Source: Perkinsus chesapeaki ATCC PRA-425
Taxonomy: Eukaryota > Protista > Perkinsozoa
DNA: 57,885 nt
Assembly (NCBI GenBank): GCA_013115145.1
Contig: JAAPAO010000173.1
Location: 1 to 57,885, forward strand
Direction of reading: 5' to 3'
The number at the start of each line of letters is the position of its first letter. Within the stretch, counting starts at the first letter, position 1. The translations under genes and the position numbers were made by a program. Below, piece after piece: positions 5,014 through 47,534 of the stretch. The notes below the pieces were generated by a model. The model had not been told where the DNA came from. It searched no databases and saw nothing but the letters and a program-made list of their open reading frames with translations.

Positions 5014-7679
5014 TCAACTTACTTGTAAGACTTGTTTTAGTTCTAGGCTGTCAGCAACGGCATGGCAAAACTCATACGTACCCAACATAATTGCGCACCC
5101 TGGGATGACCTGAAAGTAGCCTCATTCGTATCTTTCACGCTTCAACCTATGATACCTTCAGCAGTCGCGGTCCCAAGCCAACAGTAAATCCGCGAAGACG
5201 ATACTCCTTAAAAATCGCCACCATAGCGGATCCTGTCGTATGAATCCTAAAAGCCATACCATTCCACTCATCCTTCTCACTGTAAAAAGCGCGCGCCCGG
5301 ATGATCGATTTATCCTACGGTGAGCTCCGTATCGACTTAGATATTGTGTGATATAAATTCGTTTGATGACATGTCCGTCCAATCGAAATGTTCCTCTCCT
5401 TCCATCCCACCTCCGCAACCGACCAGCTACACAGGGGCACCCCAAATCGATCAACTGGGCGCGCTTCTTCACTCACCGTTTTGCCAAGTTGGTTTGTTGC
5501 TTATTGGGCCGACTGGCGGTCTGAAGCTGTGTCTTGACCATATCAAATGGATGTGTTGCAGCAGCTGCAATGGTGCCGCAAACTGCGCCGTTAAGGAAGG
5601 AAAACCCAAAAGTTTCAAGCCAAGTTGCGGGTTGGTTAACCTGAAACAAGTACCAAATATTTTCCGAGGAAAGTGTCCGTAATATAGCCAATGGTAGAAA
5701 TATCGATCCTGGGAATCGAACCCTCGCTGGCTGTAGGAGATGCTCAGATCAAGCCAACGAAGAGGAACATCAGCAACTATTCCCCGTTGTGAAATGTTTT
5801 CTAGCAGACTTCCTTTCATATCCCCGCTCGTGTTGCCGTCGCGCCACATGTATCCCGTCTTGCGAGAACGATCGATTCCCCGAATCTTTCAAAACAGGTG
5901 TCATAAAACAAGCTGAATTCTCCAAAGCAATGACTTCAGTAGTATATTTTTTGTTATGATCTTTCGACGACGCGCTTTTACTAAATCGACTTGATATTTT
6001 TCCAATTATACTTAACGATCAGAGAGTCACTTGCCTTCACAAATGCGTTCTTCGGAGATTGAAGTCTTCCTAGTGCTGAGATATAATGTAAATTCAATAC
6101 CTCTGGTGGAAATGCACAGATACCGCGCTACTTGCAGAGTCGCTAAGATTCCACGTGCTCAGTAACTACAATGTGGATTTGACCTTGGGTGACCAAACTT
6201 GCGCGATCGCCCTTCTTCCAGGTTGTCTGCGATATTATATACTCCAGCATGGTCATCTCAATTGGTCATGCTCTCCAAAACCCGCATGACCGTCGTGCTT
6301 TGGAAAATACTCAAATAGACTAGAGAACAGCCTTCTTACTCGCTTCATAACGATAGTGTAGGCATCAAAGGTCTTCCCAATTTAACCCCACAAATATCCT
6401 TCCCAATTTAACCTTTGAAGTATCTTTCCCTATTCAACCTCTAAAGTATCTTTCCCTATTTAACCTCTAAAGTATCTTTCCCTATTTAACCTCTAAAGTA
6501 TCTTTCCGCATTTAACCTCTAAAGTAGCGTTCCCCATTTAACCTCTAAAGTATCCTTCCCTATTTAACCTCTAAAGTATCTTTCCCTCACTACATTAGCC
6601 TGCTTCTCAGCCAGTTCCAGCAGTTCTTCATTATTAGCATACCTCGCCGCTCCACGCCGTTCCACGTGTTCCGGGAGGAATATCTTTTTATTGTACTCGT
6701 AGAGTGACCAATAAATTGCAGAAAATGGCAAGTCCCTGGGGAAGAACAGAAACCATCAAATGGAGTCGCGCACTACCAGCTCGCGGATGTAATACGAAAA
6801 TATACAATGGAAAATGACCGAAAGGTGATCAGTTAGAATCAAGAAAAGTTTACTTTCTATAGGCTCAAACAAACGAAGCGGTGGAGGGACTCATGGTAAT
6901 GTGAGGGGCGATAAGCTGTCATTTAAAAGTTACGAAACTGCTCAAGATTCGGAGTGAAATACTAAAGCTTCGTCCGCTGCGAAATTTAATCTCTATTATA
7001 TTCCACAAGAAGCAAGGTTGAAGCTAAGATATCCTTACTACCTAACCAATGTGGGTAGCAATCCACGCCAGAGACTTGAAAAGGAGTCTTCTCGTAGAAC
7101 TCGCTTAACCGTCGCAATGGCACCCTCGCCCATTCCAGTTGTCGCTTGTACACGCGTACGCAGAAACTCCACTGGAGAGGAAATTATTTCATTTGTGAAA
7201 GTGAAGACTTACAAGGAGAAAACAAAGTAACAGCGGTGGCCCGTGCGGCCGCACTGGCTACTCCATCGGGGACTTTTTCGCGCCAGTGCTCATAGAGCAC
7301 GAAAAAGGTCTGAGGAATATGTTAGGTTGAAGCCTGCAAGATGCAAAATAGGTTGTGTACCCAGTTAGACGGTATTTGGTATACTAGGCTTGTGACTGTC
7401 CCGTTCCATAAGGCTCGCCAACCGTAAGTGCTTTTAATATGTCGCATCACCTGCAAGCCGGTAGTATTCGTTCGCTGATGATTCAGAGCCGGCGAGGCCT
7501 AAAAATATCTTAGCTCCATCCAAGTAAGATAAAGAGCAGGTTAGATCGAGATGCCCTACCTGCCAGTAGTTCTTGACTACATCAAAGGGAGTACAAACAG
7601 CCGTGACGGCAACCGATCCCATTGTAGAGGCCACCATTGTGTACCAGAAGGTCGCCTTTTCGCCATCTGGCACACTCAT
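5014..7679 (-). CDS. Mitochondrial carrier (SLC25A39/40, MTM1-like), multi-exon
   Basis: Three carrier signatures PFDVVK, PLEFLR and PFDMVK, plus WRALWNG, LWRGLLPTLVR and GLGPRLLK-VIPGCAIMLGTYE. ATG at 7679. Introns resolved at 7499-7559, about 7310-7360, about 7166-7206, 5427-5476, 5280-5318 and 5110-5155. The segment between about 5640 and 7040 is unresolved and the last exon may extend past 5014. Confidence 0.9.
6375..6587. repeat. 26-bp minisatellite (AGTATCTTTCCCTATTTAACCTCTAA)n in a carrier intron
   Basis: About 7-8 tandem copies read directly from the sequence. Confidence 0.9.
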
Positions 7680-8348
7680 CTTACAAGGCAACAACGCAAA
7701 CCATAGTTCTAAGGACACCAGAGAAAAAATACGGAAAAAATATCATCACCAGGGATCGAACCCGCGGGTAGAGGAAGACGGGGCGATAACCAGAAATTCT
7801 TCGGCGAAGACGAATTTTAATGAGCGAAATTTCATTTCCAAAAAACCGTCTCTGGGTAAGTATTTGACTGAGCGCATCTTAGCTCGACCCATGCAAGATA
7901 CGCAAAAGCTTCACAGGAACGGTACATTGCGTATCTCACATACGATATGTGTGCCGACTTGTTCTTGCATTTCAGGTCAATAATGAAATATGAAATCTAT
8001 CTCTAGAGCCCAATATAGGTGCAGCAATTGCTTCATTATCGAAGCGTGTATGAACTCGCTCCTCACACCACAGTCGGCACTAGCTAGTTTGTTAACTTGA
8101 GCTCCCTACCGAGTGACTCGGTCCGATTCGGTAATCCCGACATACAATTCATCAGAATATCCTTTTTATGCTCGAGGAAGCGCTTGATAATTAATGCGAC
8201 GAGAAGTGAAGTCAATCGTCTGTTTTTGCATTCTCTCGACTTCCTTTCGCAAATTGAAACATATGAGATGTTAATGAGTCCACTTCTGCTGCCCAATAAA
8301 GCCTTTGACTTGTTAATATTGATCAACCTACTCAAAGTTAGACACTCC

Positions 8349-45900: not shown

Positions 45901-46625
45901 CAGCAAAGACAACGATAGTAACCACAGCAAAGACAACGATAGTGATATTAAACCACAGCAAAGACAACGATAGTAACATTTCAGGTCAAAAGGGCACATA
46001 AAACCCGTTCATGATGGGCCTAAAATCTACTGTTTCCCAATAAAATGATTTTCGCCGTCGAAGTAATCATCTTTTACTACTTCATGAGCTCTACGACTTC
46101 CTCTACGACCCCGCCAAGTTTAACGTCCTCCTTCCTTATCTTCATCCACCCCTTTGCCAACTTCTCGCTCACCACATTCTCCTCGACCAACGCGCAGAAA
46201 CGTGCACCAGCTCTGAAACGGTAAACCAAGTAGATGAATTTGCTTCGCCTGGAGGAGTAATCGGTCTGCCCCCCTCCAACGAGAATTCTTGTCAAGGTGT
46301 GTAGTAAAACATATGAGACCAGAATAATTAATATCAGTAGTAATCATAATAAAGTTTATGAGCTATGATAAACTATAGATGACTCTTATGTGACCCAGTA
46401 TAAATTTGATACTCATTCAATGCCAGACATATAGACGGTAATGCTTGATAATAAAAGATACGTTAAAGTGAATTATTCTCCACACGTAAGGGCTTACCAA
46501 CTACAGCAAGCACAAACGATGAAGAGAGGCATTTCTACCGACTTTCCCAGACAACGCAGGTTCACCATGGTTAAGAATTTATAAAATGAACGAGACGGCG
46601 GAAGTCCGATAGACTTCATAAATGA
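42969..46625 (-). CDS. Histidine-kinase-like protein with two HATPase_c domains, multi-exon
   Basis: Domain 1: HNALKFT, DTGLGI, IFEPW, GLGLS. H-box-like LAHMLVTPHLGITG. Domain 2: DPNRLRRIFYQLADNALKFT, DTGCGF, HPFY, GIGLGLN. Start and stop positions are tentative. Confidence 0.8.
43823..44036. repeat. About 38-bp minisatellite (GATATCTTTCGCACTATAAAGATTTTCCATCCATAAAA)n in an HK intron
   Basis: 6 copies; the core is shared with the 31-bp array at 31820. Confidence 0.95.
45670..45978. repeat. 31-bp tandem repeat (AAACCACAGCAAAGACAACGATAGTAATATT)n spanning an assembly gap (N run about 45753-45847)
   Basis: The same unit flanks both sides of the gap. Confidence 0.9.
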
Positions 46626-47534
46626 CATTTTCGGATACCGAAAGTAAATATAAAATATATAAGAAACTATAAAGGGGAACCGTCGAGATGGTGAAAGACT
46701 AGCAGTTGGTGAGCAGTCGGATGAGCGAAAATAATACAATAGTTTATAGGGAAATAATAGTGAGTAATTATAAAACAGGAGAATATTATCAAGTACTACG
46801 AAAGATAATAGAATGCTCCGAGGTAAGATACTACTGAATAAAAGTATGTAGGAAGCACGCTACAACCTAAGATACTATTTGTAAAGAGCAGGCTCCAAGC
46901 TAAGATACGTTTTGTTGAGAGTATGGTTCAACCTAAGATACTACTTGTTTATCAACGTTAATCGTTTCTTCTTAACGTCATCTTTAACCATCATTTTCAT
47001 CGCTTCAGTTAATCCGACAATTCCATTAAAAGGAGACTTCATATCGTGGGTTACATGGCCTTGTTCCTAAGCAGAGTATCTTAGGTTAAATCGTGCAAGA
47101 TAGGAAATAGGTTGAAATGCAGAAGCGAGCACATCTTAGGTGAACCATGCAAGATACAAAATAGGTTCAATAAGATTGCGCCATTACCTCTTTTGAAAAA
47201 AACTCATCAGTTTTACTCCGTTCCGGATGATTAGCATATCCCTCTTCGACCGACATGTAGTAAAAGCCTCAACCTAACCTATTATGTATCTTCCTCGCTT
47301 CAACCTCCACCCAAAATGCTCAGACCAATCGATCATTAAGGCGTGCGCATCAAAAGCTCAGTATAAATCTCGCTCGCCTAAAACGTCTAATTCCGCCTTG
47401 CCGTCTCTCCTGGAACCTTCCGTCCATTAAATTGCTGATAAAGAGCCGCTTTTTATAAAGCCCAAGGAATAATAATTCATATCCTATCTCAGCTGTAGGC
47501 AATCTAACCTCGAAAATATCTTTTAAGTTTGGAT

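What the first reader, a model, noticed from the sequence alone, without database searches (positions are those of the whole stretch)
5110..47170. Family A: a hairpin-ended 28-37 nt unit that fills short introns of unrelated genes in both orientations (introner-like)
Seen: consensus GTATCTTAG(G/C)TTGAAGCGTGCAAGATAC(AAAATAG), with inverted termini GTATCTT/AAGATAC, occurs at least 20 times by eye. At 37692-37726 the unit is itself a complete 35-nt GT..AG intron. Introns 5110-5155 (carrier) and 26560-26607 (unrelated gene) match at 32 of their first 36 nt. Sense copies supply the donor (5155, 26607, 37726, 42097). Antisense copies fill most of introns 7499-7559, about 7310-7360 and 33464-33518 and place CTAA(C/G) just before the acceptor. 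Splicing these out restores conserved carrier and HAD-like motifs. Established: near-identical introns in unrelated genes are the hallmark of introner elements (Micromonas, Aureococcus, Amoebophrya). Inference: a small intron-generating or intron-colonising family in a perkinsid-like genome. I do not know of a description, but cannot search the literature.
Basis: partly seen in the sequence, partly recalled or inferred. Interest (0 to 1): 0.88.

Follow-up and report, generated by a model that had tools for sequence, protein, structure and literature searches.

The report
Old conserved repeat filling tiny introns
A 40-letter repeat with mirrored ends really does fill many of this oyster and clam parasite's tiny introns in both directions, but the copies sit at the same spots in a related species and are kept by selection, so they are ancient, not newly jumping.

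Summary
A profile of the unit GTATCTTAGGTTGAAGCGTGCAAGATAC(AAAATAGGTCA) finds about 38 copies in the window, and shuffles give none. The window is an annotated Perkinsus chesapeaki contig.

Copies lie almost only in or across short introns of unrelated minus-strand genes. Among 46 copies whose direction I could assign, 23 are sense and 23 antisense.

- Of 14 copies in a block syntenic with P. olseni, 7 have a same-orientation partner at the same place, 2 share the intron with the unit flipped, and 5 are unmatched or unresolved.
- 3 of 4 copies in a methyltransferase gene recur in a second relative.
- Four-fold sites are near saturation (38% identity), yet orthologous units are 71% identical.
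- Substitutions avoid the family's conserved positions.
- There is no excess of target-site duplications, no near-identical copy, and no species-specific subfamily.
- The inverted ends show no compensatory changes, so a hairpin is not what is kept.

Splice sites use the unit in several registers. The donor can be at its first GT, 3-5 nt upstream, or inside it. Antisense copies place CTAAGAT 6-9 nt before the acceptor.

Best reading: an ancient, fixed, introner- or MITE-like cassette under site-specific selection. What it does is unresolved.

First readers noted similar families on other pieces of this genome. None shown to me had been followed up.

The parts
5117..5157 (-). Sense unit. It forms intron 5110-5155 of a minus-strand mitochondrial-carrier gene, and the unit's own GT is the donor.
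   Evidence: nhmmer E 7e-9. Splicing joins LGPRLLK to VIPGCAIMLGTYE.
7011..7034 (-). Partial unit in an intron after the exon ...LLPTLVR of the second carrier gene.
   Evidence: E 0.004; ORF 7038-7172.
7316..7355 (+). Antisense unit filling intron 7310-7360. CTAAC lies 7 nt before the acceptor.
   Evidence: E 3e-9. Splicing joins IPSNW to TFFVLYEHW.
7504..7542 (+). Degenerate antisense unit in intron 7499-7559.
   Evidence: E 0.017. It follows the exon ending PFDVVKNYWQ.
7873..7911 (+). Unit upstream of the second carrier gene. Antisense to it and followed by CTCAG. Context unresolved: a 5' UTR intron or intergenic DNA.
   Evidence: E 4e-8.
12742..12763 (+). Half unit about 170 nt upstream of ORF 12931. 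It is the only hit at E<0.01 between 8 and 24 kb.
   Evidence: E 2e-4.
24646..24685 (-). Sense unit in DUF3431-gene intron 24642-24688. The donor GTGG lies 4 nt upstream of the unit.
   Evidence: Orthologous to L003 10358-10395. The junction LSW|LRN is the same in both species and in the NCBI P. olseni proteins.
24838..24877 (-). Unit straddling an exon-intron junction. Its first 15 nt code NLSSM, the donor GTGTGC lies inside the unit near 24861, and the acceptor ends at 24819.
   Evidence: Orthologous to L003 10162-10201. The P. olseni proteins read ...GNLRSM|YSMFPVEEA.
25138..25178 (-). Sense unit. Intron 25128-25176, with the unit's GT as donor.
   Evidence: Orthologous to L003 9858-9897. 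Frame logic follows the HSPs.
25268..25306 (-). Sense unit in intron 25249-25310. The donor GTGG lies 4 nt upstream.
   Evidence: Orthologous to L003 9734-9773 at 33/40 identity with shared derived variants.
26570..26609 (-). Sense unit of putative intron 26560-26607. No counterpart was found in P. olseni.
   Evidence: E 2e-10. The P. olseni site holds different content.
26877..26909 (+). Antisense unit. Putative intron GTGACC...TTTGCAG.
   Evidence: Orthologous to L003 8405-8444.
29773..29813 (+). Antisense unit in an intron GTGAGT...TTTTCAG. The orthologous P. olseni intron holds a sense unit.
   Evidence: Compared with L003 5851-5891.
29913..29953 (+). Antisense unit at the 3' end of an intron of about 150 nt.
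   Evidence: Orthologous to L003 5685-5725.
29997..30036 (+). Second antisense unit in the same intron. No P. olseni counterpart.
   Evidence: E 4e-9.
32206..32245 (+). Unit in a poorly conserved stretch. Context unresolved.
   Evidence: E 1e-7.
32354..32377 (-). Partial unit. Context unresolved.
   Evidence: E 0.003.
33109..33148 (-). Sense unit in the 3' part of the 140-nt intron 33094-33233. The intron starts with an ATCGATCACGTGATCGAT palindrome.
   Evidence: Orthologous to L003 2333-2369.
33471..33510 (+). Antisense unit filling intron 33464-33518. The orthologous P. olseni intron (L003 1887-2003) holds sense unit(s).
35047..35069 (+). Degenerate unit in the middle of the RNA-confirmed 355-nt intron 34908-35262.
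35811..35850 (+). Antisense unit in an intron after ...GGGGAGAG of the methyltransferase gene.
   Evidence: Same place and orientation as L001 2028-2067.
36862..36902 (-). Unit inside the open methyltransferase ORF, coding DVSKLAACMIPERL. It is absent from the relative, which has a segment only 2 residues longer there and so shows no insertion. An in-frame 33- or 75-nt intron cannot be excluded.
   Evidence: E 6e-9.
37398..37435 (+). Degenerate antisense unit in the intron of about 120 nt at 37370-37489.
   Evidence: Same place as L001 274-311.
37688..37728 (-). Sense unit that is itself the 35-nt GT..AG interval 37692-37726.
   Evidence: L001 begins inside the same unit at the same place. Not confirmed by RNA.
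41260..41284 (+). Partial antisense unit. Putative intron GTTAAC...ATACAG.
   Evidence: E 0.008.
41504..41543 (+). Antisense unit. The acceptor CTTTAG ends 6 nt after it.
42060..42099 (-). Sense unit. Putative intron starting ATG|GTATCTTAGG.
44276..44314 (+). Antisense unit downstream of the HATPase_c exon.
44425..44465 (+). Antisense unit. An acceptor ends 8 nt after it.
44552..44591 (+). Antisense unit in putative intron GTGAGC...ATCTAG, flanked by a 12-bp direct repeat AGGGTGGTTGAG. This is the only TSD-like case.
45342..45373 (-). Sense unit truncated at its 3' end, upstream of the HATPase_c exon.
46845..46943 (-). Three tandem sense units with a 33-nt period. The first GT (46941) follows an exon ending ...LTLINK.
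47074..47167 (+). Two antisense units in one putative intron of about 117 nt.
47275..47306 (-). Unit truncated at its 5' end.
   Evidence: E 0.006.
57419..57458 (+). Unit near the contig end. Read on the minus strand it begins G|GTGAGTTATT. The gene context is unknown.
   Evidence: E 2e-9.

Best explanation
Family A is an ancient dispersed element of about 40 nt. Its parts are the termini RTATCTTAG and CAAGATAC, a centre with a GCRYGC core, and a 3' tail AAAATAGSTCA.

It probably spread in a Perkinsus ancestor as a tiny MITE- or introner-like sequence. It is now fixed in or across short spliceosomal introns of many unrelated genes, with sense and antisense copies equally common.

The copies are no longer mobile. 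They are inherited at orthologous positions and kept by site-specific purifying selection.

The spliceosome uses whatever part of the unit is at hand:
- In sense copies the donor is the unit's first GT, a GT 3-5 nt upstream, or a GT inside the unit.
- In antisense copies the arm reads CTAAGATAY at branch-point distance, and a YAG acceptor ends 6-9 nt after the unit. The tail often reads GTGAGY or GTGACC and serves as the donor.

Shown: the family exists, it is associated with introns, it is balanced in orientation, its positions are orthologous, and it is constrained.

Inferred: the transposon-like origin, and that splicing is the constrained function. Splice signals cannot easily explain the conserved centre or the invariant ATC. 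I therefore think an additional sequence-specific binding factor is likely.
For: - Family and copy number.
- Genes lie on the minus strand and introns are confirmed or restored.
- Orthologous positions in P. olseni and in a second relative.
- Neutral sites are near saturation (four-fold identity 0.377) while orthologous units are 0.707 identical and non-orthologous ones 0.629; 2 of 1854 derangements reach the observed value.
- Constraint is uneven across positions (chi-square p 1e-9). Between-species changes avoid high-information positions (rho -0.64, p 7e-6).
- 23 sense and 23 antisense copies share the same consensus. A GT start occurs in 18/23 sense against 7/23 antisense copies (p 0.003).
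- An acceptor ends 6-9 nt after the unit in 10/22 antisense copies against 2/23 mirrored controls (p 0.007).
- No recent activity: the best paralogous pair is 90% identical, within-genome identity is 0.62 against 0.59 between species, and two P. olseni isolates carry the same 15 copies.
- DNA contigs from elsewhere in the genome match the units over about 40 nt.
Against: - No target-site duplications beyond chance and no transposase link, so the mobile origin is inference only.
- The centre is as conserved in antisense as in sense copies (11.7 against 11.1 bits).
- ATC at positions 3-5 is invariant whether it is intron +3..+5, +7..+9 or exonic. This argues that the constraint is not the splice signals themselves.
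- RNA evidence covers only three introns.
- Five of the 14 syntenic copies lack a clear partner and two are flipped, so some turnover has occurred.
- A 25-kb P. marinus locus has no copy, but it is not orthologous to the window.
Confidence: 0.55

Rival explanations
1. Family A is a DNA-level docking site for a sequence-specific protein, such as a transcription or chromatin factor. It sits in introns because that is where non-coding DNA is available inside dense genes. Its overlap with splice sites is secondary.
For: - Orientation is balanced 23:23, with an identical consensus and equal conservation of the centre in both orientations.
- Constraint is site-specific, with invariant ATC and conserved C17/G20 in a GCRYGC core.
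- Conservation does not depend on the splice register, and holds even where part of the unit is exonic.
- There is no stem covariation.
- Earlier scan notes argue the same for the B-box in tRNA-derived intron cassettes of this genome.
Against: - Copies are rare outside intron-rich genes. Between 8-24 kb and 47.4-57.4 kb there is nearly none.
- There are strand-specific features: GT starts in sense copies and an acceptor at a fixed distance in antisense copies.
- No binding protein is known.
- The left arm is far more conserved than the right, which is odd for a dimeric site.
Confidence: 0.25
2. One reading: an introner family that is active now or was active recently, and is currently creating or colonising introns.
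For: - Whole short introns in unrelated genes are alike, for example 32/36 between 5110-5155 and 26560-26607.
- The unit has inverted termini and occurs in both orientations.
- One intron (44552-44591) is flanked by a 12-bp direct repeat.
- 5 of 14 syntenic copies have no clear partner and two are flipped.
- Units occur in tandem and doubled within introns.
Against: - Most testable copies are at orthologous places and share derived variants.
- There are no near-identical copies and no species-specific subfamilies.
- There is no TSD excess.
- Two P. olseni isolates carry identical copy sets.
- The largest introner survey scored ie = 0 for P. olseni, P. marinus and P. chesapeaki (PMC9860276, Supplementary Table 4).
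Confidence: 0.07
3. Sense copies are minor-spliceosome-like (U12-like) introns made by a TA-targeting transposon, as proposed for Physarum. There, U12-type introns carry rtatctt...aagatat inverted repeats flanked by TA.
For: - The termini RTATCTT...AAGATAY are the same letters as in Physarum (bioRxiv 10.1101/2020.10.12.336362).
- Position 1 varies between G and A, as in the GT-AG and AT-AC subtypes.
- ATC at positions 3-5 is invariant, and several copies read RTATCC.
Against: - In several introns the motif is not at +1. The donor lies 3-5 nt upstream or inside the unit, consistently in two species and in NCBI protein models.
- Sense introns have no TCCTTAAC-like branch site near their 3' end.
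- Half the copies are antisense, with GTRAG donors.
- A survey of over 3000 genomes found no minor introns in Alveolata (PMC10639083).
- No U11, U12, U4atac or U6atac was seen in the window, though one window is not a fair search.
Confidence: 0.04
4. The unit is kept because its inverted ends form an RNA or DNA hairpin that helps splice very short introns.
For: A 7-bp inverted repeat is present in most copies, with 73% of cells pairable. Other intron cassettes in this genome are also palindromic.
Against: - There are no compensatory double changes in 48 copies.
- Pairing is no better than in shuffles (73.1% against 75.4%).
- The covariation score is below the shuffle mean.
- The two arms decay independently, and the left arm is much more conserved.
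Confidence: 0.04

Closest known systems
Introner elements (Micromonas, Aureococcus, fungi, dinoflagellates; Gozashti et al. 2022, PMC9860276)
   Same: One repeat makes up whole introns in unrelated genes, inserted in either orientation. Terminal inverted repeats are common. The shortest families have a median length near 30 nt.
   Different: - Copies here are old and orthologous between species with saturated synonymous sites.
- They are 60-90% alike rather than near-identical.
- They show no TSDs and are under purifying selection.
- Their splice register varies.
- That survey scored no introners in three Perkinsus genomes.
Amoebophrya introners (Farhat et al. 2021, PMC7789003)
   Same: They come from a related alveolate lineage. 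The repeated introns carry 8-20 nt inverted repeats joining the 5' and 3' ends.
   Different: Amoebophrya elements are strain-specific, carry 3-5 nt direct repeats at their boundaries, and use non-canonical splice sites. Family A is shared between species, lacks direct repeats, and uses GT-AG wherever I could test it.
Physarum U12-type introns with rtatctt...aagatat ends (Larue, Elias and Roy, bioRxiv 10.1101/2020.10.12.336362)
   Same: The terminal inverted repeat has the same letters and includes TA at both ends. A transposon origin is proposed for introns there too.
   Different: In Physarum the motif is the minor-spliceosome 5' splice site at +1. Here the splice register varies, half the copies are antisense, and alveolates are reported to lack minor introns.
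MITEs (miniature inverted-repeat transposable elements)
   Same: Short, non-coding, dispersed elements with inverted termini that occur in both orientations.
   Different: At about 40 nt, with 7-9 nt termini, Family A is far below usual MITE size. No TSD and no partner transposase are known, and the copies are fixed and conserved.
tRNA-3'-half (B-box) intron cassettes of the same genome
   Same: They are tiny introns built largely from one recurrent cassette. They occur in both orientations, are shared between Perkinsus species, and keep a short conserved core.
   Different: The sequence family is different. Family A has no Rfam match to tRNA, 5S or snRNAs. Its GGTTGAAGC centre only loosely resembles a B box with one base missing.

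Membership tests
Introner elements (operational definition of Gozashti et al. 2022) | At least four introns in non-paralogous genes whose similarity reaches close to both splice boundaries. 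| tested here: met
   Examples are 5110-5155, 26560-26607, 25128-25176 and 37692-37726 (sense), and 7310-7360 and 33464-33518 (antisense), in carrier, DUF3431, methyltransferase and other genes. The similarity is too short and too diverged for that survey's BLAST cut-off of 1e-5.
Introner elements | Evidence of recent proliferation: near-identical copies, lineage-specific insertions or polymorphic insertions. | tested here: not met
   The best pair is 90% identical over 40 nt. Mean identity is 0.62 within the genome against 0.59 between species. Most testable copies are orthologous. Two P. olseni isolates share all 15 copies.
Introner elements / MITEs | Target-site duplications flanking the element. 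| tested here: not met
   Flanking direct repeats are no longer than at 3000 control positions (mean 4.77 against 4.65). The one exception is at 44552-44591. Old age could have erased TSDs.
Introner elements / MITEs | Terminal inverted repeats. | tested here: met
   GTATCTT and AAGATAC, 73% pairable across 48 copies.
U12-type (minor spliceosome) introns | 5' splice site RTATCCTT exactly at intron position +1. | tested here: not met
   The motif is RTATCTTAG. It is at +1 in some introns (5155, 25176), but at +4 to +6 or partly exonic in others, consistently in two species.
U12-type (minor spliceosome) introns | Branch site TCCTTRAC 10-15 nt before the 3' splice site. | tested here: not met
   None is present in the 3' parts of the sense introns.
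U12-type (minor spliceosome) introns | The organism has U11, U12, U4atac and U6atac snRNAs and minor-spliceosome proteins. | not testable with these tools
   No whole-genome search of Perkinsus was possible. The literature reports no minor introns in Alveolata (PMC10639083).
tRNA-, 5S- or snRNA-derived repeat | Detectable match to an RNA family model. | tested here: not met
   Rfam gave no hit at the units at E up to 10, either on the whole window or on a 691-nt stretch with four copies. ARAGORN found nothing.
Structured RNA hairpin element | Base pairs kept through compensatory changes. | tested here: not met
   There were 0 double changes, and all 500 shuffles reached the observed pairing.

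The most novel reading that the evidence does not exclude
Perkinsus introns are not filler. They are assembled from a small set of selectively maintained cassettes: Family A, the ATCGATCACGTGATCGAT palindrome, the GCGCGC cassette and tRNA B-box pieces. These would act as orientation-independent docking sites for sequence-specific factors. Family A would be the commonest; by my hand count it is present in roughly 40-50% of the introns of the five genes I could model. On this reading intron sequence content has a conserved function across species, and the splice sites merely ride on it.
Probability: 0.28. Interest if true: 0.8.

Novelty: new variant of a known kind. Interest (0 to 1): 0.62.

Why it matters
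Repeated intron families are usually read as fresh transposon insertions, and they are used to argue that transposons create introns. Here a family looks like an introner but is old, fixed and constrained. There are two ways to read that. It could be what an introner burst looks like tens of millions of years later, which would offer a way to recognise ancient bursts. Or intron content in this parasite lineage carries a function of its own.

There is also a practical point. The family escaped the largest introner survey, and the public annotation of this contig misses intron-rich genes. A profile of the cassette could therefore improve gene models for Perkinsus, an important shellfish pathogen.

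Tried and rejected
- Origin from tRNA, 5S, U2 or U6: by eye, GGTTGAAGC resembles a B box, plant 5S box A and U6 3' motifs. Rfam and ARAGORN gave nothing, so I dropped this.
- Hairpin function: rejected by the covariation count.
- TSD search: negative.
- My own dynamic-programming gene finder was too conservative to be useful, as was brute-force pairing of ORFs across GT..AG intervals. I used cross-species tblastx blocks, frame logic and NCBI P. olseni proteins instead.
- RNA-seq: only two tiny runs exist. They gave three introns.
- P. marinus: the only locus I could fetch (L004, through a histidine-kinase representative) is not orthologous to the window. It has no Family A copy in 25 kb. That is suggestive but inconclusive, because the window itself has 16 kb nearly free of copies.
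- Two of the contigs I looked up could not be read.
- Two pattern scans of JGI metagenomes found nothing.
- The 468-aa ORF at 8097-9503 found only the window's own annotated protein. The public annotation there (gene 2274-9503 on the plus strand) runs across both minus-strand carrier genes.
- The organism behind L001 (SRR12548988) could not be identified.

Full report

Yes. The 28-nt consensus has 10 matches at 3 or fewer mismatches, against 0 expected. It has 31 matches at 8 or fewer mismatches, against 0 in ten shuffles. Aligned copies show that conservation continues about 12 nt further, to AAAATAGGTCA. An nhmmer profile built from 23 seed copies finds about 38 copies at E<0.01.

Copies cluster in intron-rich minus-strand genes at 5-8 kb and 24-47.4 kb. 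They are nearly absent from 8-24 kb and 47.4-57.4 kb. DNA contigs from elsewhere in the same genome match individual units over about 40 nt, so the family is genome-wide.

The window is the whole NCBI contig JAAPAO010000173.1 of Perkinsus chesapeaki.

The two assembly gaps lie in or against minisatellite arrays. No unit or intron call depends on them.

**2. Are the copies in introns?**

Pfam places the coding strand on minus: Mito_carr, DUF3431, a methyltransferase and HATPase_c.

The sparse RNA data confirm three minus-strand introns, and one of them holds a degenerate unit in its interior. Removing 5110-5155 and 7310-7360 restores carrier motifs.

For the DUF3431 gene, frame-consistent splice sites in two species agree with NCBI P. 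olseni proteins (junctions LSW|LRN and NLRSM|YSMFPVEEA). They show three registers:
- The donor is the unit's first GT.
- The donor lies 3-5 nt upstream of the unit.
- The donor lies inside the unit, so the unit's first 15 nt are coding.

'Sense copies supply the donor' is therefore only partly right.

In antisense copies a YAG acceptor ends 6-9 nt after the unit in 10 of 22, against 2 of 23 in a mirrored control (p 0.007). This puts CTAAGAT at branch-point distance.

Sense copies start with GT in 18 of 23, antisense copies in 7 of 23 (p 0.003). Orientation is balanced, 23 to 23. In the five genes I could model by hand, roughly 14-15 of about 30 introns carry a unit. This is my own count, not a computed figure.

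**3. Old or recent?**

A DUF3431 exon found P. olseni proteins. Their locus L003 is collinear with window 34912-23842.

Of the 14 window copies in that block:
- 7 have a partner at the same place and in the same orientation: 24646, 24838, 25138, 25268, 26877, 29913 and 33109.
- 2 share the intron, but with the unit flipped: 29773 and 33471.
- 5 are unmatched or lie in unalignable DNA.
- In addition, one P. olseni unit (L003 8545-8585) lines up with a window remnant near 26735-26770 that is too decayed for the profile to detect.

A Logan contig from an unidentified relative (57% protein identity) carries units at three of the four methyltransferase positions.

Orthologous pairs share derived variants, for example GAGSTTGAGCG and GAATCTTAG...ATGTG. 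They are 70.7% identical, against 62.9% for non-orthologous cross-species pairs. Only 2 of 1854 derangements reach this value. Four-fold degenerate sites in 841 aligned codons are only 37.7% identical.

Within-genome and between-species identities are alike (0.62 against 0.59), and no pair exceeds 90%. Flanking direct repeats are at control level. Two P. olseni isolates carry the same 15 copies.

**4. What is constrained?**

Positions differ strongly in variability (chi-square p 1e-9). A3 and T4 are invariant, and C5, C17 and G20 are kept in at least 90% of 48 copies.

Between-species substitutions in nine orthologous pairs avoid high-information positions (rho -0.64). This test is partly circular, because those pairs contribute to the profile.

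The stem shows no compensatory change, and pairing is no better than in shuffles. Sequence is kept, not the hairpin. The centre is equally conserved in both orientations. ATC is kept whatever the splice register.

These facts fit site-specific selection that splice signals alone do not explain. They leave a DNA-level or other sequence-specific binding role as the main rival.

**5. Comparison with known systems**

- Introners. The family matches in form but fails the tests for recent mobility and TSDs. The largest survey scored ie = 0 for three Perkinsus genomes (PMC9860276, Supplementary Table 4).
- Amoebophrya introners. These differ by being strain-specific and by having non-canonical boundaries.
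- Physarum. There is a striking letter-for-letter parallel with the rtatctt...aagatat ends of Physarum U12-type introns. The variable register, the antisense half of the family, the missing branch site, and the reported absence of minor introns in alveolates all argue against membership. I keep it as a low-probability lead.
- Literature. Searches found no description of this family in Perkinsus.

**6. Verdict**

The mechanism of origin and the constrained function remain inferred.

Noticed in passing
window 36286-36326, 33094-33233, 35405-35578, 35970-36000; L001 1378-1421, 1754-1774, 2209-2230: A second cassette, the palindrome AAATCGATCACGTGATCGATTT, fills or seeds many short introns in both species. 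The RNA-confirmed 174-nt intron 35405-35578 holds three copies.
   Followed up: partly
window about 36960-36985 (minus strand); L001 721-746: The same palindrome also lies inside the methyltransferase ORF, coding IDQVIDF (IDHVIDF in the relative). A 48-nt in-frame GT..AG interval around it means a hidden in-frame intron cannot be excluded.
   Followed up: partly
window 33313-33357, 37823-37868, about 5290-5320: A third cassette, GTGAAAAGCGCGCGCCC...GATCGATTT, forms whole introns of about 45 nt. One of them is confirmed by RNA.
   Followed up: no
window about 24955-25007 and about 34700; L003 about 1605-1625 and 10060-10090: The motif GGCGGAGCGAAGCG (or its complement) recurs in introns and is conserved between the two species.
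   Followed up: no
window 5700-5730, 7750-7775; L003 about 1463-1490, 2250-2275, 3975-3995: B-box-like tRNA 3'-half fragments (GGTTCGAWYCC or the complement) sit in introns, as earlier notes of this scan describe.
   Followed up: no
window 6374-6587, 30232-30437, 31820-32061, 43823-44036: Minisatellites of 26-38 nt units share the GTATCTT / AAGAT ends with Family A, for example GTATCTTTACGCACTATAAAGATTTT.
   Followed up: no
window 44530-44605: A 12-bp direct repeat AGGGTGGTTGAG flanks the unit-bearing putative intron. Two in-frame acceptors lie 12 nt apart. This is the only TSD-like case and possibly a younger insertion.
   Followed up: partly
window 33734-33817; L003 1587-1669: An intron without a unit keeps a nearly identical stretch of about 30 nt, GCAAGATTGCAAGATTTTG, in both species. 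It repeats the CAAGAT of Family A's right arm just upstream of the acceptor.
   Followed up: no
window 33610-33631; L003 1772-1795: A candidate micro-intron of 22 nt (GC-AG) in P. chesapeaki and 24 nt (GT-AG) in P. olseni at the same place, built on GATCGATT.
   Followed up: no
window 2274-9503: The public annotation calls one plus-strand gene of 507 aa across this span. Two minus-strand mitochondrial-carrier genes with Family A introns lie inside it, so this is probably a mis-annotation.
   Followed up: partly
window 330-1641: The annotated gene has a weak ZBED1 RNase-like (hAT-transposase-related) Pfam hit.
   Followed up: no
L004 (P. marinus GG684654.1, 25 kb): No Family A unit and no ATCGATCACGTGATCGAT palindrome. 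GTATCTT occurs at background frequency (0.04 per kb, against 0.55 in the window and 0.94 in L003). The locus is not orthologous to the window.
   Followed up: partly
window 26151-26345, 45670-45980: Both assembly gaps abut tandem arrays. A 48-nt-period array runs up to the first gap. Arrays of one 31-nt unit flank the second, so its true length is unknown.
   Followed up: partly
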